This document shows positions 8,404 through 58,932 of a stretch of 64,000 bases of DNA, in pieces. The position numbers and the translations under genes were made by a program. This DNA is from Octopus sinensis (Eukaryota), in contig NC_042997.1 in the NCBI RefSeq assembly GCF_006345805.1, forward strand, positions 162,254,001 through 162,318,000. The letters run 5' to 3'. The notes under the pieces are model-generated. The model was not told the DNA's origin. It ran no database searches and saw only the letters and a list, made by a program, of their open reading frames with translations. Within the stretch, counting starts at the first letter, position 1. Each line of letters opens with the position of its first letter.

Positions 8404-8634
8404 TTGTGTTTGGGGAGTCATTCTCTTTTAGTGCCTTATTATTTAACATACCGGTTCAATTTCCACTCATTTATTTATTTATGTATTTAGAAAAAACAAA
8501 TAAGTAAATGAGTGGAAATTTTACCGGTGAGTGTGTTAAATAATAAGGCACTAAAAGAGAACGACTCTCCCCAGACACAACAAAATCTGCTTGAACACAC
8601 GAATTCGCATAAAGAATCTTGCAAACAAAATCCA

Positions 8635-19879: not shown

Positions 19880-21720
19880 ATACTGGTAAATTAATAATGC
19901 GCTGATTACAAGTTACATTTAAATGATGAGATTCAAACTTTTCTTGTTCAAGTCCTCAGTACAAAACAATGTTTACAGATATGCAAAGAGAAAAGTTTTC
20001 TTCCTTAATAGATAAAAGAAAATGCAGGCTGACAGACTGATTTCAATGAGAACTCTAAGAAATTGTGTGCAATAATTACAAGCAAATAGTCTTAGTCAAT
20101 TAACAAAGATGGGTTTCGAAAATAGCTGTCCCATTGGATAGATGTATGTATGTGTGGGTGGGTGGGGGTATGAATATATATATATGTATATGCACATGTA
20201 TGTAAGCATATGGATATGAAAGTAAACAGATCAACATACAGACGGATAGTTACGTAGGTTATATGAACAAACAAGCACACATACGCAAATAAAGACTGAA
20301 ACACATGACCATATATATATATGTACATACACACACGTTACTTCACACAAGGACACATATGGAGACACACGTCCACACATATGGAGATGCACATCGATAC
20401 ATATAGACATAGTTGCAAAACACACAATACACACTCAGACATGCACACACAAGAAGATAGAGGTACACACATATACAAACAAACAAAAAGGAATGCAGTG
20501 TGAGTAACAGACAGAGTCAACGACTATTGAAAAGGTTGCAAGACACAACAAAAATTTTAGAAAATAAAAGAAATAAGTGGAAATTTTACCAGTGAGTGTG
20601 TTAAATTATAAGGCACCAAAAGAGAATGGCTCTCCCCAGACACAACAGAATAAAAAATTAGCTTTGAAACTTTGCATACTGGAGACCAATCATCAACTAT
20701 TGTAATTAATTTTTTCAAAACAGAGTGAATTTTCTAGAAAGTTTCTCAGAATCCACAGATGGGGACTTGATATTATTACATGAATTCAAATCATTCATAT
20801 ATCTGGTGAAAATCAATCACCATTTACATTGATCTTCTTACATGACTAAATATGACTCACATCAGTTCTTCATAAAAACATATTTTCACATTGGTGATGA
20901 TGGATTAATTTTCCTGATGCCAATACAGCTGAATATATTAAAAATAATTTTAACATATACAACCTTTATATTCACATAAACAACTGCATTGCTAGAAAAA
21001 GTAGCTCCAGACTAACTCTTTTAGAATAATTGGAAGACTTCACAGCAGAAAATTATCCTACTTTTGACAAAAATTGGCTACTTATTCTTGAACCTTATTG
21101 TGCAAAAGTTCTCTCTATAATTCATAACATACACACAAATACTTAAGAAAGTAACAGCTTGCGTTTAGTGAGTTTAATATTAGTTGAGTTTTATCATAAT
21201 TTGTGACTAACATGCCAAAACCAGATTTTAAGGCACTCCTTGTACTGATAAATGGCCTGACTCACACAGACTTGGAAAAATTTCATACAGCCAGTTGATG
21301 TAAAACAATGATGAGAATATAATGATCATAGTTGACTCAGCAACTGTTCCAGCAGAAGCTAGGAAAACTGAGGTGCATATTTTTCATTACTCCTAGATTT
21401 GAAGTTTCAATGACAATGCTAACATACAATGGGTTGGAATTTATTCAATTAAAGGAGTGATTAAATTGACATGATTGTAAGAAAATAGAAATTATAGTCC
21501 AAAATTTAATGGTGTAGTGGAAAGAGTAATGAAAGCAATCAAATTTACATCGAAAGTTTTCAGTTCAGAGATATCATAGTATGTGTAAGTCATCTCCAAC
21601 TGAGAAATTATTTTGTAGTCAGTTAACAAGGTTGAGCAAATAGTTCATTACAAGAACAATATAATGGAATTTCCATCAGATAAACGTCAATTAAATTTAT
21701 GCTGACAGAAATGATTGGAT
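19880..21720 (+). mobile_element. Highly degenerate Gypsy pol relic (RT trace, then integrase), interrupted by microsatellites and a half foldback element
   Basis: LHLNDEIQTF...SINKDG (RT-like), YCAKVLSIIHNIH, ENIMIIVDSATVPAEA, NYSPKFNGVVERVMKAIK. 21008-21720 is paralogous to 1-700. Confidence 0.45.
20508..20655. mobile_element. Right half of the foldback element family (8404, 46503)
   Basis: agagtcaacgactattgaaaaggttgca...agtggaaattttaccagtgagtgtgttaa...ctctccccagacacaacagaat. Confidence 0.75.
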
Positions 21721-24269: not shown

Positions 24270-25000
24270 ATTCTTTATTTATCGTCGATAAAATCAATAA
24301 TATTGGAGGTGTAAGGATATAACACTTTCTTTGTCCTCAGATATGTTGGAGACTTCCACTGACAGCTCTGGCAATTGGCTTCCTGGTTGTACTCAAAAAT
24401 CCATGTTTCATCACCAGTAATGACTTTATAAAGCAAGTCTGGTTCAGTTTGAAGACGTTCGAGGATGTTCTGACACACCTGCATGTGGCACGCCTTCTGT
24501 TTATCATTCAGCACCTTTGGCACCATTTTTGCGCAGACCTTCCATATGCCCAAATCTTCAGTGATAACCTTCCAAACACTGTCCCTTTTCATGTCCATCT
24601 GACTTGCAATCATTCGTAGTCAACTGAGGATCATCACACACCACCTGCCTTACCTGCTCGACGTTGACCTCATTCCTGCTTGTTGAAGGCATCCCGCTCC
24701 TGGAGTCATCTTCCACCTCCTCGCGCTCCTCTGTGAATCTCTTGCACCACTCAAAAATACGTGTGCTCGATATGGAGTTATCTCCATACACTTGCTGAAG
24801 TATTTCAAGAGTTTGTGACGGAGTTTTCCCCAACAGAGCCAAAAACTTCAGGTTTATTCGTTGTTCATCGTTCGTTCCTCAGTGCTCATAACTGAACGAC
24901 CCGAAAAAGTGGAAATGCATGTGAAAAATATGCAACGGTTGCAGAAAGCTAAGATTACAGTTATATACTTCGCATTTTGGATTTATCATAACCTGCCCGT
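24270..25000 (-). mobile_element. Mariner transposase relic (frameshifted)
   Basis: ORFs 24558-24842 (HTH; VEDDSRSGMPSTS) and 24275-24613 (KVCAKMVPKVL; VITGDETWIFEY containing the first catalytic D). Confidence 0.9.
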
Positions 25001-35634: not shown

Positions 35635-36174
35635 TTATATATTTATATATATGTATATGTATAATTCTTAGTGTACTAAATCTACTAAACCCATTGGCAT
35701 CTCTCGGTGTTGAGCATTTAATTCTATAAAATCAAGTATCTATGATCTCAGATGGCAGTATAAGTGTTTTTGACCTAAAAGAACGGGGACATGAGAATTT
35801 TATTTATAGTTATATTAACAGTATCAGTTCAGTGAGCCTTCATCAAGTGGTATAACCTTTTACTTGATTATATTCTGTTTTCTAAAAAATATACTATTTC
35901 TATTAGAAAAGCAAGATTTTATAAATGAGCCGACGACTTGGTAGAAATAGTAGCTAAACCTCTCTCTCAAACTTCGCTTGATAATCTTAGAAGAACATCC
36001 TTGTATAAATGTAACCAGAAGCGCATTGATGTTACTCCACCCACCACAAAAAAAAAACAAAAACAAAACAAACAAGCAAACAAACAAACAAACAAAAGGG
36101 GGATGATTATAGCTGGGATGTTTTTTCATCATAGGTTTGTTTAGTCAGGGCCGGCCAAGGGCTAAAGAAAACGA

Positions 36175-36290
36175 GAAAGCAAAGAGGAAGAAGGAGAAGA
36201 AGAAGAAGAAGAAGAAGAAGAAGGAGAAGGAGAAGAAGAGAAGAAGAAGAAGAAGAAGAAGAAGAAGAAGAAGAAGAAGAAGAAGAACAA

Positions 36291-36322
<32 letters not shown>

Positions 36323-36384
36323 GCAATAGCAACAACAACAACCGCAATAGCAACAACAACAGCAACAACAGCAGCAGCAACAAT

Positions 36385-36422
<38 letters not shown>

Positions 36423-36444
36423 CAACAACAACAACAAACAACAA

Positions 36445-36486
<42 letters not shown>

Positions 36487-36738
36487 TAGCAACAACAACA
36501 ACAGCAATAGCAACAACAACAACAACAACAACAGCAGCAGCAATAGCAACAACAACAACCGCAATAGCAGCAGCAACAACAACAACAACAGCAATAGCAA
36601 CAACAACAACAACAACAACAACAGCAACAGCAACAACAACAACAACAACAGCAATAGCAACAACAACAAACAACAACAGCAATAGCAACAACAACAACAA
36701 CAACAGCAACAACAATAACAACAATGACGACGACGACT

Positions 36739-36777
<39 letters not shown>

Positions 36778-36790
36778 CCACCAAAAGCAA
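36175..36790. repeat. Compound trinucleotide microsatellite (GAA to CAA/CAG with CAATAG interruptions)
   Basis: Direct reading; source of the poly-K/R/T/A/N/S ORFs. Confidence 0.95.
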
Positions 36791-36814
36791 CAACAGTATG
36801 ATTATACAATCAGA

Positions 36815-39224: not shown

Positions 39225-40255
39225 TATGTTTGTATGTATGTATGTATGTATGTATGTATGTTTGTGTGTATGTATGCATGCATGTATGTATGTATGTATG
39301 TATGTATGTATGTATGTATGTATGTATGTATGTATGTATGTATATGTATGTATGTATGTATGTATCTATCTATCTATCTATTTTGTCTGTCTGTCTGTAT
39401 GTCTGTTTGTATGTATGCCTACACCAGCGCAGCTACACACACTCCACCTCACCCTATCTCCATCTCAAGCACGCACGCGCGCACGCGAACACGCACACGC
39501 ACACACACACATGAATCCACTTACATCTCCACTCACACACACACACATGTGCACACATATACACGCGCATACATGCTCTTCCACATATACACGCACGCGC
39601 GCCCATAGACACACACATCCCCACACGCTCACACGTAGACACACACACATATATATACAGAGAGAGAGAGAGAGCGACAGAGTGACACAGACCCACACAC
39701 GCACCCATACACATGTGCACACACACACACACGCAGTTTCTGCCACACACACACACATACACGCTACCATACCTACACACGCTACCATACATACACACGC
39801 TACCACACACATACACACACGCACGGATACACATACCGACCATTTTTACACTCTCCTGCCCCTGAAAGCACTTTCTCTTTGTCCTTCTACTTCTGGTCAC
39901 TTCAAAAATGTAACCACGCGTGGATTATTGGCGATTTTTTTCCTGCTTCTTCCTTCTTCCCATTGGACTTTACTGTTTTTCCTGCTTCCAAAGAAGAGCT
40001 ATACTCGAAATGTAAAACAACTACTCTTTTCCTTCTCCGAGCGTCATATTAATACTTTGCTACGTCCTCACGTTTCTTCTTTTCTTCTTCCCCTGTTTCT
40101 TTCTGTGTTTTTTAAATTAACTATGTATGTGCAGGAAAGATCCGTCCATCCATCCATCCATCCATCCATCCATCCATACATACATACATACATACATATA
40201 TACATACTACATACATATATATGTATATATATATGTGTGTGTGTGTATGTATGTA

Positions 40256-40309
<54 letters not shown>

Positions 40310-40315
40310 ATATAT

Positions 40316-40346
<31 letters not shown>

Positions 40347-40410
40347 GTATGTATGCATGTATGTATGTATGTATGTATGTATGTATGTATGTATGTATGT
40401 ATATGTATAA
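39225..40410. repeat. Microsatellite complex (TATG, CA/AC-rich, CATC, CATA, TA, TATG) with a decayed Penelope-like tail at about 39960-40125
   Basis: Direct reading; the insert is homologous to 31570-31719. Confidence 0.85.
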
Positions 40411-40766: not shown

Positions 40767-41085
40767 TCAACAACTATAACAGAATTTATGAATCAAATTT
40801 CTCCAGCTACAGCGATCATCAACTAGCTGATACCATTTGTCTGTTGGGATAGACAGATATTTCAGGTTCCGCTTGACAGTGTCCTTGAGTCTCAGTATGG
40901 ACTTACCAATGTTTCGGTAGTTATCTGCCAGTTGCGAAAACATGATTTTCTTTGGGAGTCTATCATCGCCAAGTCTTGTTGTATAATCTGTCCAACGGAG
41001 ATTTATTTGCATCAAGAGTTATTGCATAGATTGAAATCCAGTCTTCCTGAGGACTTCGGAGTTTCAGATATGTTGTTGCCGTCAT
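40767..41085 (-). mobile_element. RTE/BovB-like LINE C-terminal fragment
   Basis: NSEVLRKTG; QINLRW; DDRLPKKIMFSQL; LRLKDTVKRNLK; DDRCSWRNLI. Confidence 0.75.
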
Positions 41086-41720
41086 TGGTAAGTGATGCCA
41101 AGACACCCTCAGCCTTCTTGGAAATTTTAGCAATGTGTTTTGTCCAATGCAGGTCGGTGTCGACAAAAATGCCCAGGTCACGTTCAAAAGAAGACTTTTT
41201 GACATTAGTGTTGTGGAGGGAGTAAGTAGACACTGGGTTTTTCCTCCCAAAATGCATGGTGGTACATTTGTCCACAGCCAGCTTGAGTTGCCAGTCCATG
41301 ATCCACTGCTGCATTGTGTCCAGGTCTAATTGCAATAAAGATCTATAGTGTACAGGATCTGTTCTCTTTATTTCGAGGTACAACTTGATGTCATCTGCAT
41401 ATTTCAGCACTGTGGCAGTCTTTAAGTTGGCATCTATGTCATTAACATATGCAACAAATAAAAGGGGGCCAAGAACAGATCCCTGTGGCACACCAGATGT
41501 CATCTCAGAGGGCGAAGAGTGCTGTCCTTGAACTGTGACAACATCTTTTCGGCCGATTATGATCATGATAGCTCTCAAATGTTGCATATATTCACTATAT
41601 ACAATTTCAAATGGTAATGATCTAAATGTTTCCACTGGGAAGAATAATGTCTTAAATCTTTTATCGAAGATATATTTGACCTTTCGGAGTTATACATGAT
41701 GCAGGTGAATTGAAACTGGA
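41086..41720 (-). mobile_element. CR1-type LINE reverse transcriptase fragment
   Basis: ORF 41012-41635: TSGVPQGSVLGPLLFVAYVNDI; KYADDIKLY; WQLKLAVDKCTTMHFG; ERDLGIFVDTDLHWTKHI. Confidence 0.88.
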
Positions 41721-46502: not shown

Positions 46503-46830
46503 ATTCTGTTGTGTCTGGGGAGAGTCGTTTTTTTTTATGCCTTATAAAGTAACATACTCACCGGTAAAATTTCCACTTTTTTCTTAATTTTATTTTCCTA
46601 AACTTTTCGTTGACTCTCAGAGACTCTTAGAGAGTCAATACTATTGAAAAGGTTGCAGACGCAACGGAAATTATAGGGAAAATAAAAATAAGAAATAAGT
46701 GGAAATTTTACCGGTGAGTGTGTTACATTATAAGGCACAAAAAGAAAATGACTCTCCCCAGACACAACAGAATATGCTTCAACACACGAACTCATATAAA
46801 GAATCTTGCAAACCAAATCCAAAAACGAAA
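46503..46830. mobile_element. Foldback element (arms about 46503-46585 and 46690-46773; internal hairpin 46610-46638)
   Basis: attctgttgtgtctggggagagtc... versus ...gactctccccagacacaacagaat; same family as 8404 and 20508. Confidence 0.8.
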
Positions 46831-46885: not shown

Positions 46886-46891
46886 TTTATT
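46886..46891 (-). terminator. Candidate reflectin polyadenylation signal AATAAA
   Basis: First canonical AATAAA on the minus strand, about 115 nt after the stop codon. Confidence 0.5.
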
Positions 46892-47006: not shown

Positions 47007-48272
47007 TTAAAATCTGTGCATGTTCATCCAGCGCCCATTGAAGTCCATCTCGTAGTGAGACATATCAAAGAATCTTTCTGGGTAGTCGTGGAACCTATGT
47101 CCCCAGTTGTAGTTATAGTGGGGATAATAATTATAGTAGTGGCTCCCTCTGTGGTAATGGTTATAACCAAAGAAAGGATAGGAGTATTGATTGTACATGT
47201 CCATCCAGTTACCGTCGAAATCCATTTGGTAATGGGACATATCATTGAACATGTCGTAATAGTTGTGGTACCTATGTCCCCAACTGTAACTGTTACCCGA
47301 ATGATGATAACCGTTGGAGCCATTGAATGAATGGAAAGGTTGATAGCCATGACCATACATGTTCATCCAGTGACCATTGAAGTCCATCTGGTAGTGGGAC
47401 ATATCAAAGTATCTTTCTGGGTAGTTGTAAAATCTATGTCCCCAGCTGTAGTTAGAGTGGGGATAATAATTGTGGTAGTGGCTCCCCCTATAGTAATGGT
47501 TGTGACCAAAGAAAGGATGGGAGTAATGATTATACATATCCATCCAATGACCATTAAAATCCATCTGGTAATGGGACATATCCATGGATCTCTCGGGATG
47601 GTACATATGCAGGAAATTCATATATGGACAATTCATATAACGCCTGTAATAGTTGTCATATGGACTACAGTGACGTCCGTATCTGTCCATATATTGGCCA
47701 TTCATGTCCATTTGGTAGTGGGACATATCCATGAATCTCTCGGGATGGTACATATGAAAGGAATTCATATATGGACAATTCATATAACGCCTGTAATAGT
47801 TGTCATATGGACTACAGTGACGTCCGTATCTGTCCATATATCGGCCATTCATGTCCATTTGGTAGTGGGACATGTCCATGTATCTCTCAGGATAGAACCC
47901 GTAACGACCATTGTAGTAGCTAGAGTTGTAGCCATGTCTTGAAGAATTGAACATGTAGGAGTAGGGGCTAGAGTAGTGTCCGTGCATGTCCATCCACCTT
48001 CCATACATGTCCATCTGATAACCGGACATATCCATAAACATATCTGGGAAATCCATGAAATAATCAAATCTATGGAACCTATCGAAATCATGGAAACCGT
48101 GATAGTTGTACATAGATCTACCATAGTACCTGTCTTGGTCATGATATCTCCCATCGAAGCCGTAGGATCTGGGGTCAACCATTCTTCCATAAGAATCCAT
48201 GTATCTGCCATGGAAGTCCATTGACATCATGTGCATTGGTTCCATTCTACCGTTGTATCTGTGTCCGTACAT
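47007..48272 (-). CDS. Reflectin (cephalopod structural-colour protein), 421 aa, single coding exon
   Basis: Uninterrupted ORF from ATG 48272 to TAA 47007. N-terminal motif MEPMHMMSMDFHGRYMDSYGRMVDP; seven (M/F)D-X5-MD-X5-M(D/N) motifs, five preceded by PER; rich in Y/M/H/D/G/N/R with no A, I, K or T. The family is certain; the paralog name cannot be assigned. Confidence 0.97.
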   Translation of the reverse strand: MYGHRYNGRMEPMHMMSMDFHGRYMDSYGRMVDPRSYGFDGRYHDQDRYYGRSMYNYHGFHDFDRFHRFDYFMDFPDMFMDMSGYQMDMYGRWMDMHGHYSSPYSYMFNSSRHGYNSSYYNGRYGFYPERYMDMSHYQMDMNGRYMDRYGRHCSPYDNYYRRYMNCPYMNSFHMYHPERFMDMSHYQMDMNGQYMDRYGRHCSPYDNYYRRYMNCPYMNFLHMYHPERSMDMSHYQMDFNGHWMDMYNHYSHPFFGHNHYYRGSHYHNYYPHSNYSWGHRFYNYPERYFDMSHYQMDFNGHWMNMYGHGYQPFHSFNGSNGYHHSGNSYSWGHRYHNYYDMFNDMSHYQMDFDGNWMDMYNQYSYPFFGYNHYHRGSHYYNYYPHYNYNWGHRFHDYPERFFDMSHYEMDFNGRWMNMHRF

Positions 48273-48319
48273 GATGGAATACAAAAACTGGTTACCAATC
48301 TCTGTAAGTTCAATTCAAG

Positions 48320-48352
48320 CTGAAATTAGAAAATATGTGAGTGAGTTACTGA
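48320..48352 (-). promoter_or_regulatory. Splice acceptor and branch point of an intron in the reflectin 5' UTR
   Basis: Minus strand taactcactcacatattttctaatttcAG|cttga; 47 nt upstream of the ATG, with an in-frame TGA just inside the exon. Confidence 0.6.
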
Positions 48353-48485
48353 AAAATTACACAATATATATCTGAAAAATTTTATGGTTTGCATTTTATT
48401 CCCGTCAATGTGCTCTTTACAAATCTACGTATCTATACAGGCAAACAGATAACACACAGATAACGTATAACTTCGCACAAATTTA

Positions 48486-49233
48486 TGTACGTACGTACTT
48501 ACGTACGTACGTATGTATGTATGTATGTATGTATGTATGTATGTATGTATGTATGTATGTATGTATGTATGTATGTATGTATGTATTATTTATGTATGTA
48601 TGTATTATTTATGTATGTATGTATGTATGTATGTATGTATGTATGTATGTACGTATGTATGTATGTATTATGTATGTATGCATGATATTTCATTGAGTTT
48701 TAAGTCCTTCTTTAGAGAGTTCAAGCCAGTCGCTAACAAAGCGACAAGATTGTTTGAGTTAAGAGAGTTCCCGCTGTTTGTAAATATGTGGTTGAGTTGG
48801 TGTGTTGGTCAACTATCGATGCATACACCCAAGTGGGTGCATATATTCATCTAAAGAATCTCAGCTGGAAATCTTTGGAATATCTTACAAATATTCACTG
48901 TACCACTAATAGATTGGATTCGGAGAATCCACGCCAGCTTCTTTTGCATTTTCTTAAAAAAAAAAACCTTGTATTTCTTTTTTTTTCTTGTAATTTGTTG
49001 GTACGTAGCCAGTCAGGGTACAAGTGTTGTAAGTTCCTTTTTAATTCACCATATGTATGTACGTATGTATGTATGTATGTATGTATGTATGTATGTATGT
49101 ATGTATGTATGTATGTATGTATGTATGTATGTATGTATGCATGTATGTATGTATGTGTGTGTGTATGTGTGTGTGTATGTAGGTATGTATGTATATATGT
49201 ATATATGTATGTATGAATGTATGCATGCATACA

Positions 49234-49264
<31 letters not shown>

Positions 49265-49518
49265 ATGTATGTATGTGAGCGTGCATGTATGTGAATATTC
49301 AGTTTATTTCAGGATTTCTTGCCAATAGAGAAAGAACTGGTTTCTAACCTAGATCCAAGGCTCCTTCATTAGAATTTCAGCATCAACAACAGGGTATTTT
49401 TGTATGTATGTATGTATGTATGTATGTATGTATGTATGTATGTATGTATGTATGTATGTATGTATGTATGTATGTATGCATGTATGCATGTATGTATGTA
49501 TGTATGTACGTACGTATG

Positions 49519-49552
<34 letters not shown>

Positions 49553-49688
49553 TGCATGTATGTATGTGCGTACGTATGTATATGTATGTATGTATGTATG
49601 TATGTGTGTGTGTATGTGTGTGTGTGTATGTAGGCATGTATGTATGTATATATGTATATATGTATGTATGAATGTATGCATGCATACA

Positions 49689-49719
<31 letters not shown>

Positions 49720-49945
49720 ATGTATGTATGTGAGCGTGCATGTATGTGAATATTCAGTTTATTTCAGGATTTCTTGCCAATAGAGAAAGAACTGGTTTCT
49801 AACCTAGATCCAAGGCTCCTTCATTAGAATTTCAGCATCAACAACAGGGTATTTTTGTATGTATGTATGTATGTATGTATGTATGTATGTATGTATGTAT
49901 GTATGCATGTATGCATGTATGTATGTATGTATGTACGTACGTATG

Positions 49946-58394: not shown

Positions 58395-58932
58395 AAGCAC
58401 AAGGCTTGAAATTTTGGGGGAGGGGGCCAGTCGATTACACCGACCCCAGTGCGCAACTGGTACTTAATTTATCGACCCCGAAAGGATGAAAGGCAGAGTC
58501 GACTTCGGCGGAATTTGAACTCAGAACGTAAAGACGGACGAAATACCTATTTCTTTACTACCCACAAGGTGCTAAACACAGAAGGAACAAACAAGGACAG
58601 ACAAACGGATTAAGTCGATTATATCGACACCAGTGCGTAACTGGTACTTATTTAATCGGCCCCGAAAGGATGGAAGGCAAAGTCGACCTCGGCGGAATTT
58701 GAACTCAGAACGTAGCGGCAGACGAAATACCTATTTCTTTACTACCCACAAGGGACTAAACACAAAGAGGACAAACAAACGGATTAAGTTGATTATATCG
58801 ACACCAGTGCGTAACTGGTACTTATTTAATCGACCCCGAAAGGATGAAAGGCAAAGTCGACCTCGGCAGAATTTGAACTCAGAACGTAACGGCAGACAAA
58901 ATACGGCTGCGCATTTCGCCCAGCGTGCTAAC
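58395..58932 (-). mobile_element. Family-1 SINE trimer (one head, three cores)
   Basis: aaatac anchors at 58541, 58725 and 58899; the head appears only at 58905-58932. Confidence 0.9.

What the first reader, a model, noticed from the sequence alone, without database searches (positions are those of the whole stretch)
47007..48272. Intact reflectin gene with seven repeat motifs
Seen: 421-aa ORF with the reflectin N-terminal motif and seven repeat motifs, undamaged amid heavily decayed TEs. Known: reflectins are cephalopod-specific proteins that self-assemble into high-refractive-index structures in iridocytes and leucophores, producing structural and, in some squid, tunable colour. This is the only clear host gene and the main biological system in the window. 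Its linkers look unlike the Arg-rich squid reflectins I recall, so it may be an uncharacterised paralog.
Basis: partly seen in the sequence, partly recalled or inferred. Interest (0 to 1): 0.9.

Follow-up and report, generated by a model that had tools for sequence, protein, structure and literature searches.

The report
Intact histidine-rich octopus reflectin gene
The window holds an intact gene for a reflectin, one of the light-reflecting skin and eye proteins of cephalopods. It is a previously undescribed, unusually histidine-rich copy in the known reflectin cluster of Octopus sinensis, and its counterpart in O. bimaculoides is cut down to a 99-residue stump.

Summary
Window 47007-48272 (minus strand) is one uninterrupted 421-codon ORF. 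It has the reflectin N-terminal motif (23 of 26 consensus positions) and seven repeat motifs: four strictly canonical, three with one substitution each.

The window is Octopus sinensis chromosome CM016859.1. The gene lies about 117 kb from another reflectin-like gene, so it sits in the known octopus reflectin cluster. Named reflectins of Sepia, Acanthosepion and Loligo match at E 1e-42 to 1e-59.

No protein more than 57% identical over its length was found in the databases searched. The exact sequence is not in the 15-billion-protein collection.

The O. bimaculoides ortholog (UniProt A0A0L8FMH8) is a 99-aa ORF that lacks residues 86-407 through an in-frame deletion.

Purifying selection is indicated but the counts are small. 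dN/dS is 0.27 against the ortholog and 0.12-0.33 between internal duplicates. The coding sequence is more conserved than its flanks.

The protein has 10.7% histidine, the highest in my 14-protein panel, and normal arginine. Its net charge is -8 with histidine neutral and +37 with histidine protonated.

Expression could not be tested. Verdict: a new member of a known family, of moderate interest.

The parts
47007..48272 (-). Reflectin coding sequence: 421 codons plus TAA stop, one uninterrupted ORF
   Evidence: homology; called as a 421-aa gene on GCA_006345805.1 CM016859.1
48168..48245 (-). Reflectin N-terminal motif (RMN), aa 10-35, MEPMHMMSMDFHGRYMDSYGRMVDPR
   Evidence: 23 of 26 match the published consensus
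47961..48035 (-). RM1, aa 80-104, canonical. An extra MD(X)5 step starts at aa 73
47805..47879 (-). RM2, aa 132-156, canonical
47658..47732 (-). RM3, aa 181-205, canonical
47511..47585 (-). RM4, aa 230-254, canonical, no Arg or Lys
47334..47408 (-). RM5, aa 289-313, third step MN instead of MD, no Arg or Lys
47172..47246 (-). RM6, aa 343-367, starts ND instead of M/FD, no Arg or Lys
47010..47069 (-). RM7, aa 402-421, ends MN, runs to the C-terminus
47586..47879 (-). Recent in-frame tandem duplication: two 147-bp units (RM2+linker and RM3+linker), 95.9% identical, dN/dS 0.33
   Evidence: TRF 47560-47893, period 147, 2.3 copies; codon comparison
47019..47585 (-). Older internal duplication: block RM4-linker-RM5 (47358-47585) against block RM6-linker-RM7 (47019-47246), 86.8% identical, dN/dS 0.12. 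These blocks carry the His/Tyr-rich linkers
47052..48017 (-). Segment (aa 86-407, 966 bp) missing in frame from the O. bimaculoides ortholog
48320..48333 (-). Inferred 3' splice acceptor (TTTTCTAATTTCAG). It aligns with a pyrimidine-tract+CAG that three paralogs carry about 18 nt before their start codon
   Evidence: alignment; inference only, no transcript seen
48311..48313 (-). Relic of the ancestral start codon: TTG where paralogs have the ATG of MNR.... It is out of frame with the present CDS. An in-frame TGA lies at 48315-48317
48362..48374 (-). TATA-like CAGATATATATTG about 95 nt upstream of the ATG, conserved in O. bimaculoides. An alternative to the spliced-leader model
   Evidence: inference
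46886..46891 (-). AATAAA polyadenylation signal 116 nt after the stop codon

Best explanation
This is a protein-coding member of the reflectin family in the reflectin cluster of Octopus sinensis (CM016859.1, about 162.301 Mb).

Shown:
- The whole protein is encoded in one exon: a short leader, the conserved N-terminal motif, then seven Met/Asp repeat motifs alternating with Tyr/His/Asn/Gly/Arg linkers.
- The gene grew by in-frame duplication of motif-plus-linker units, and the copies have since been kept under purifying selection.

Inferred from published squid reflectin biophysics:
- The product is an intrinsically disordered block copolymer that condenses into dense, high-refractive-index assemblies in reflective cells once its net charge is low enough.
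- This copy has 45 histidines, no lysine, and three repeat motifs with no basic residue. Its net charge is slightly negative when histidine is neutral (-8) and strongly positive when histidine is protonated (+37).
- It should therefore be condensed by default at cytosolic pH. That suits the static reflectors of octopus. It should also be unusually sensitive to pH between about 6 and 7.

The same gene in O. bimaculoides has lost residues 86-407, so the full-length form is kept in only part of the genus.
For: Identity:
- Homology to named reflectins and octopod reflectin-like proteins.
- RMN at 23 of 26 positions and seven RMs.
- Composition A0 I0 K0 T0 L1 V1, with Y 17.6%, M 12.4%, R 8.1%, as described for the family (PMC9779258).
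- Another reflectin-like gene (XP_029640368) lies about 117 kb away on the same chromosome.
- AlphaFold gives no fold (pLDDT 38.4, pTM 0.21), and there is no Pfam or PDB match. Both fit a disordered, family-specific protein.

Functional constraint:
- 421 open codons where the chance is about 2e-14.
- Against the O. bimaculoides ortholog: dN/dS 0.27, and the CDS is 95-95.6% identical while flanks are 90-93% identical.
- Internal duplicates have dN/dS 0.33 and 0.12.
- Polarised with outgroups, the O. sinensis branch has 1 nonsynonymous and 3 synonymous changes. The O. bimaculoides branch has about 6 nonsynonymous and 1 synonymous, counting one search's changes (minus the Q86E deletion junction) plus R5I and R48S assigned by eye.
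- An AATAAA follows the stop by 116 nt.
- A conserved acceptor-like site and a TATA-like box lie upstream.

Charge mechanism:
- Composition and charge tables.
- Published work shows that net charge density sets reflectin assembly, and that added histidines make assembly pH-reversible (bioRxiv 10.1101/456442; PMC11354490 abstract).
Against: - No expression evidence. The exact-sequence look-up found the ORF only on the genome record, not on any assembled sequencing-run contig.
- The protein is absent from the searched protein collection under four possible starts, so public annotations may not call it.
- The ancestral start codon and the N-terminal MNR... extension are lost.
- The O. bimaculoides ortholog is a 99-aa stump, and a nearby paralog there is a pseudogene. 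This subfamily is therefore dispensable in at least one congener.
- The selection statistics rest on few substitutions. The branch contrast gives a Fisher one-sided p of about 0.09, worked out by hand from those counts.
- Charge values come from sequence alone and assume standard pKa values.
Confidence: 0.75

Rival explanations
1. A young pseudogene or silent gene. The ORF is still open, but the gene is no longer transcribed or translated, and it is on the same path as its O. bimaculoides counterparts.
For: - Ancestral ATG is mutated to TTG and the upstream frame is broken.
- The ortholog is truncated to 99 aa, and the neighbouring paralog in O. bimaculoides carries at least 7 stops and a frameshift.
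- No annotated protein was found.
- No assembled transcript carries the exact ORF.
Against: - 421 open codons against about 7% stop probability per codon.
- dN/dS is 0.12-0.33 in three independent comparisons.
- The CDS is more conserved than its flanks.
- Most amino-acid changes fall on the O. bimaculoides branch.
- An in-frame ATG 9 codons before the conserved motif, a polyA signal and upstream signals are all intact.
Confidence: 0.2
2. The repeat number is an assembly artefact. Either the O. sinensis long-read assembly inflated the repeats, or the O. bimaculoides short-read assembly collapsed them. In the second case the 99-aa ortholog is not real.
For: - An N-gap starts about 72 bp after the stop of the O. 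bimaculoides ORF.
- Repeated coding units are hard to assemble.
Against: - The O. sinensis repeat units differ by substitutions with dN/dS below 1 and no indels. That is not the pattern of long-read error or artificial duplication.
- The deletion junction in O. bimaculoides shares only about 8 bp (AGATGGAC) between RM1 and RM7, too short for a k-mer collapse.
- The 99-aa ORF was already modelled as UniProt A0A0L8FMH8.
Confidence: 0.05

Closest known systems
Octopus bimaculoides A0A0L8FMH8 (99 aa, 'uncharacterized protein'), the positional ortholog
   Same: - Collinear flanks at 90-93% identity.
- Same degraded upstream region, same start codon and same last 13 codons plus stop.
- 89.7% identity over 97 aa.
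- Shares the His substitutions in the N-terminal motif.

   Different: Lacks aa 86-407, six of the seven repeat motifs. What remains is the N-terminal motif plus one chimeric RM1/RM7 motif. It carries more derived amino-acid changes.
Argonauta hians GAB1597764 and the Octopus sinensis/vulgaris LOC115215306 (XP_029640368) / O. bimaculoides XP_014779614 group
   Same: - N-terminal half is 66-68% identical.
- Same RM1-RM3 and same GRHC(S/N)PY...YRRYM linkers.
- Same cluster.
- Sister clade in the N-terminal tree, 87% bootstrap.

   Different: - Those proteins keep the MNR... N-terminal extension.
- They have 2.5-3.8% His against 10.7% here.
- They end in a non-canonical ...QVEFGGKWPSQEYE tail instead of RM4-RM7.

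Octopus bimaculoides XP_014779611 (named 'TBC1 domain family member 5 homolog A' in RefSeq, but a reflectin)
   Same: Best match for the C-terminal half (52%). It shares the ...WG(Q/H)R...YPERFFDMS.YQMDFDG.WM repeat-linker pattern and has a similar length (442 aa).
   Different: Has Q, N or R where this protein has His (5.4% His). Net charge with neutral His is +2 against -8.
Decapod reflectins: Sepia officinalis reflectin 1, A. pharaonis reflectin 14, and Doryteuthis opalescens A1/A2 as the studied model
   Same: Block-copolymer plan of N-terminal motif plus repeat motifs and linkers, and the same odd composition. The assembly rule based on net charge density is taken from this group.
   Different: - Fewer residues (242-284 aa in the two database relatives).
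- Net positive with neutral His (+3 to +4).
- More Trp (5.6-9.1% against 1.9%).
- The tunable squid forms are switched by phosphorylation, which is neither shown nor implied here.

Membership tests
Reflectin | N-terminal motif MEPMSRM(T/S)MDF(H/Q)GR(Y/L)(I/M)DS(M/Q)(G/D)R(I/M)VDP(R/G) | tested here: met
   aa 10-35 match 23 of 26 positions. The deviations are S5H, R6M and Y19. R6M is shared with other octopod members.
Reflectin | Several repeat motifs M/FD(X)5MD(X)5MD(X)3-4 | tested here: met
   Four strict matches (RM1-RM4) and three with one D-to-N or M/F-to-N change (RM5-RM7). All seven fit the relaxed definition of bioRxiv 10.64898/2026.04.14.718489.
Reflectin | Composition: no or almost no Ala, Ile, Leu, Lys; rich in Tyr, Met, Arg, Trp | tested here: met
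   A0 I0 K0 L1. Y 17.6%, M 12.4%, R 8.1%. Trp is only 1.9%. Y+M+R+W is 39.9%; criterion from PMC9779258.
Reflectin | Significant sequence similarity to named reflectins | tested here: met
   Sepia reflectin 1 E 1.8e-59; A. pharaonis reflectin 14 E 1.2e-42; Loligo MRRP1 E 9e-48. Only 14 library hits, all of this kind.
Reflectin | Gene in a tandem reflectin cluster, with the coding sequence in one exon | tested here: met
   Single ORF. XP_029640368 lies about 117 kb away on CM016859.1. The O. bimaculoides cluster has the same neighbours. Single-exon clusters are described in PMC9635652.
Reflectin | Cationic linkers between anionic motifs | tested here: inconclusive
   With neutral His, linkers are +3.8 per 100 aa and motifs -7.6, within the panel range. 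The whole protein is -8. Linkers become strongly cationic only when His is protonated.
Reflectin | Intrinsic disorder as a monomer | tested here: met
   AlphaFold mean pLDDT 38.4, pTM 0.21, only 3 residues at pLDDT 70 or above. This is indirect evidence.
Reflectin | Expression in iridophores, leucophores or eye, and assembly into high-refractive-index bodies | not testable with these tools
   No transcript or proteome data were reachable. The exact-ORF look-up returned only the genome record.

The most novel reading that the evidence does not exclude
The most novel reading I cannot exclude has two parts.

1. This could be a lineage-restricted 'histidine-switch' reflectin. Its 45 histidines, rather than phosphorylated cationic linkers, would set assembly. 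The protein would be condensed at cytosolic pH and would dissolve or swell on mild acidification.

2. Keeping it in the O. sinensis/vulgaris lineage while losing it in O. bimaculoides could contribute to species differences in structural whiteness or iridescence.

A more remote variant: the Gly/His/Tyr-rich linkers could act like the histidine-rich beak proteins that octopuses lack (PMC9068888), in a tissue with no optical role.
Probability: 0.15. Interest if true: 0.55.

Novelty: new member of a known kind. Interest (0 to 1): 0.35.

Why it matters
Octopus reflectins are poorly classified. Most are labelled 'uncharacterized', and one is misnamed as a TBC1-domain protein.

This copy adds three things:
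- An apparently unannotated seven-motif member, with the highest histidine content in my 14-protein panel.
- A clear case of a reflectin gene growing by motif-plus-linker duplication.
- A natural contrast between full-length and truncated forms in two congeners, which could be used to ask what this paralog contributes to octopus reflectors.

For materials work, it is a natural variant at the extreme of the charge-against-pH range that governs reflectin assembly.

It does not change what is known about the family.

Tried and rejected
- Pfam has no reflectin model. The only hit was noise (Formyl_trans_C_2, E 0.43).
- PDB by sequence: nothing.
- The sigma-70 promoter and terminator scan is meaningless for an animal gene and matched the shuffled expectation.
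- Rfam: no match in the window.
- Logan contigs L004-L006, which carry P0001, were tested as possible transcripts to define the 5' UTR intron. They are collinear with O. bimaculoides genomic DNA over their whole length, so they give no splicing information.
- Two more protein searches were aimed at finding an O. vulgaris ortholog. The C-terminal half returned only P0007 at 34%, and the 99-aa ortholog returned only itself.
- Exact look-ups with alternative starts found nothing.
- Antisense ORFs inside the gene (203, 104 and 82 aa on the + strand) are by-products of the stop-poor reverse complement of Met/Asp/Tyr/His codons. They have no family match above threshold.
- The 394-aa ORF at 39226-40410 is microsatellite translation.
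- I considered a mosaic origin: the N-terminal half resembles the LOC115215306 type and the C-terminal half resembles the XP_014779611 type. I did not pursue it, because Argonauta GAB1597764 shows the same two linker types in one protein.

Full report
**1. Observation**

On the minus strand, an ATG at 48272 opens a reading frame of 421 sense codons that ends at TAA 47009-47007. It is the longest stop-to-stop frame in the window. With the window's composition (35% G+C, 7.2% stop probability per codon), 421 open codons have a chance of about 2e-14.

The product carries MEPMHMMSMDFHGRYMDSYGRMVDPR at aa 10-35. That matches 23 of 26 positions of the published reflectin N-terminal motif.

Seven repeat motifs start at aa 80, 132, 181, 230, 289, 343 and 402.
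- Four fit M/FD(X)5MD(X)5MD exactly.
- RM5 and RM7 end in MN.
- RM6 begins with ND.

The composition is typical of the family: no Ala, Ile, Lys or Thr, one Leu, one Val, with Tyr 17.6%, Met 12.4% and Arg 8.1%. The gene is on the minus strand.

**2. Source and context**

An exact-sequence look-up places the ORF on Octopus sinensis GCA_006345805.1, chromosome CM016859.1, at 162,301,007-162,302,272. The window is then 162,254,001-162,318,000.

A second reflectin-like gene (XP_029640368, LOC115215306, identical in O. vulgaris) lies at 162,418,773 on the same chromosome, about 117 kb away. The gene is therefore part of the octopus reflectin cluster that the literature already describes (PMC9635652; bioRxiv 10.64898/2026.04.14.718489).

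No other reflectin sequence is in the window. The rest of the window holds:
- a reverse-transcriptase fragment;
- a weak Mos1-type HTH;
- microsatellites that create spurious long ORFs;
- a 270-bp foldback element 234 bp beyond the stop;
- no Rfam match.

**3. Relatives**

- The whole protein finds octopod reflectin-like proteins at 48-53% BLASTP identity (57% by HMMER for the best hit) and named decapod reflectins at E 1e-42 to 1e-59.
- A full HMMER scan of 1.84 billion representatives gives only 14 hits, all of this family.
- The N-terminal half is 68% identical to Argonauta hians GAB1597764 and 66% to LOC115215306.
- The C-terminal half is at most 52% identical to anything in the panel, the best being O. 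bimaculoides XP_014779611. A database search with the C-terminal half alone returned only P0007 at 34%.
- The exact sequence, with four alternative starts, is not in the 15-billion-protein collection.
'Unannotated' is therefore likely but not proven.

**4. The ortholog in O. bimaculoides**

At the edge of locus L009 (CM046601.1), flanks collinear with the window at 90-93% identity bracket a 99-aa ORF. This ORF is UniProt A0A0L8FMH8, 'uncharacterized'.

- It has the same degraded upstream region, the same start codon, 86 homologous N-terminal codons and the same last 13 codons and stop.
- It lacks window 47052-48017 (aa 86-407).
- RM1 is fused in frame to the end of RM7, across about 8 bp of microhomology.
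- An assembly gap begins 72 bp after its stop. I therefore keep a small probability for assembly collapse, although the junction homology is too short for that.

About 9 kb upstream, in inverted orientation, O. bimaculoides also has a paralog (LOC106882379). It carries at least seven stops and a frameshift, and it shares the His-rich C-terminal linker and the 3' flank of the window gene. O. sinensis lacks this segment: the window jumps from 58517 to 58785.

In an N-terminal neighbour-joining tree, the window protein and the 99-aa ORF pair with 100% bootstrap. They sit beside the Argonauta/LOC115215306 group at 87%.

**5. Is it under constraint?**

- Against the ortholog: 13 nucleotide and 7 amino-acid differences in 86 codons, dN/dS 0.27. 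The coding sequence is 95-95.6% identical while the flanks are 90-93% identical.
- The two 147-bp tandem units (RM2+linker and RM3+linker; TRF) differ at 6 sites, with dN/dS 0.33.
- The older RM4-RM5 against RM6-RM7 blocks differ at 30 sites, with dN/dS 0.12.
- Polarised with three outgroups, the O. sinensis branch carries 1 nonsynonymous and 3 synonymous changes. The O. bimaculoides branch carries about 6 and 1; this count excludes the Q86E deletion junction and includes R5I and R48S, which I assigned by eye. Hand-calculated Fisher one-sided p is about 0.09.
- The numbers are small, but all of them point to purifying selection in the O. sinensis line and relaxation in O. bimaculoides.

**6. 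Gene structure**

Three paralogs share a pyrimidine tract plus CAG about 18 nt before their MNR... start codon, and little else upstream. This looks like a conserved 3' splice site for a 5'-UTR intron.

- The window keeps the site (48320-48333).
- The ancestral ATG is now TTG (48311-48313) and is out of frame.
- A TGA sits in frame at 48315-48317.
- Translation must therefore start at 48272, nine codons before the N-terminal motif.
- A TATA-like box about 95 nt upstream and an AATAAA 116 nt after the stop are present.
- These signals are inferences. No transcript was available, and the Logan contigs I tested are genomic.

**7. What is unusual**

The protein has 45 histidines (10.7%), against 1.9-7.0% in the thirteen other reflectin-family proteins I collected, apart from its own 99-aa ortholog at 8.1%.

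- Arginine is normal (8.1%; linker R+K 10.4% against 10.0-13.4%).
- RM4-RM6 have no basic residue at all.
- Histidines mostly sit where relatives have Tyr, Asn, Gln or Arg.
- Net charge is -8 with neutral His and +37 with protonated His, the widest swing in the panel.

Published work on squid reflectins bears on this:
- Assembly size follows net charge density.
- Adding histidines to reflectin A2 makes assembly reversible on acidification (bioRxiv 10.1101/456442; PMC11354490).

By inference, this protein should be assembled at cytosolic pH and strongly pH-responsive. AlphaFold gives no fold (pLDDT 38.4), as expected for the family.

**8. Verdict**

What would interest specialists:
- the apparent lack of annotation;
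- the seven motifs built by two rounds of internal duplication;
- the histidine-rich, net-anionic chemistry;
- the full-length against truncated contrast between two Octopus species.

Expression and assembly behaviour remain to be tested.

Noticed in passing
L009 9974-11600 (O. bimaculoides CM046601.1, about 152,674,800-152,676,500); missing between window 58517 and 58785: An inverted reflectin paralog (LOC106882379, XP_014788524, modelled as 100 aa) is a pseudogene. It has at least 7 in-frame stops, a frameshift, a microsatellite in place of the MEPM start, and about seven copies of the RM2-type unit. Its C-terminal linker and 3' flank resemble the window gene at 81-82%. O. sinensis lacks the whole 5.6-kb segment.
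   Followed up: partly
window 46503-46773; related ends at 8512-8529 and 20577-20594: A foldback (MITE-like) element with 71-nt and 34-nt inverted arms lies 234 bp downstream of the reflectin stop. The same terminal sequence recurs twice elsewhere in the window.
   Followed up: partly
P0008 = XP_014779611.1 (O. bimaculoides): A clear reflectin (N-terminal motif plus six to seven repeat motifs) is named 'TBC1 domain family member 5 homolog A' in RefSeq. The same label appears as 'reflectin/tbc1 domain family' in the Argonauta paper (PMC9635652). This looks like a propagated misannotation.
   Followed up: no
window 48485-48680, 48990-49740, 39226-40410: (TATG)n/(TACA)n-type microsatellites flank the gene. 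They produce long spurious ORFs (MYVC.../HTYI... translations, up to 394 aa).
   Followed up: no
window 49233-49415 and 49688-49870: One 183-bp segment of O. bimaculoides (L009 1285-1467) matches the window twice at 91% identity. This is a local duplication in O. sinensis about 1-1.6 kb upstream of the gene.
   Followed up: no
window 41012-41635 (-) and 24558-24842 (-): A reverse-transcriptase fragment (RVT_1, E 2e-16) and a Mos1-type transposase HTH just below the Pfam threshold.
   Followed up: partly
window 36107-36809: A block of trinucleotide and low-complexity repeats is open in several frames (poly-Leu, poly-Val, poly-Cys, poly-Ser translations). It is not a gene.
   Followed up: no
L004-L006 (Logan runs SRR11869384, SRR11869385, SRR11869391): Contigs carrying a 423-aa reflectin (P0001) are only 87-89% identical to the O. 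bimaculoides locus of XP_014779611, over coding sequence and flanks alike. They come from another, unidentified Octopus-like species.
   Followed up: no
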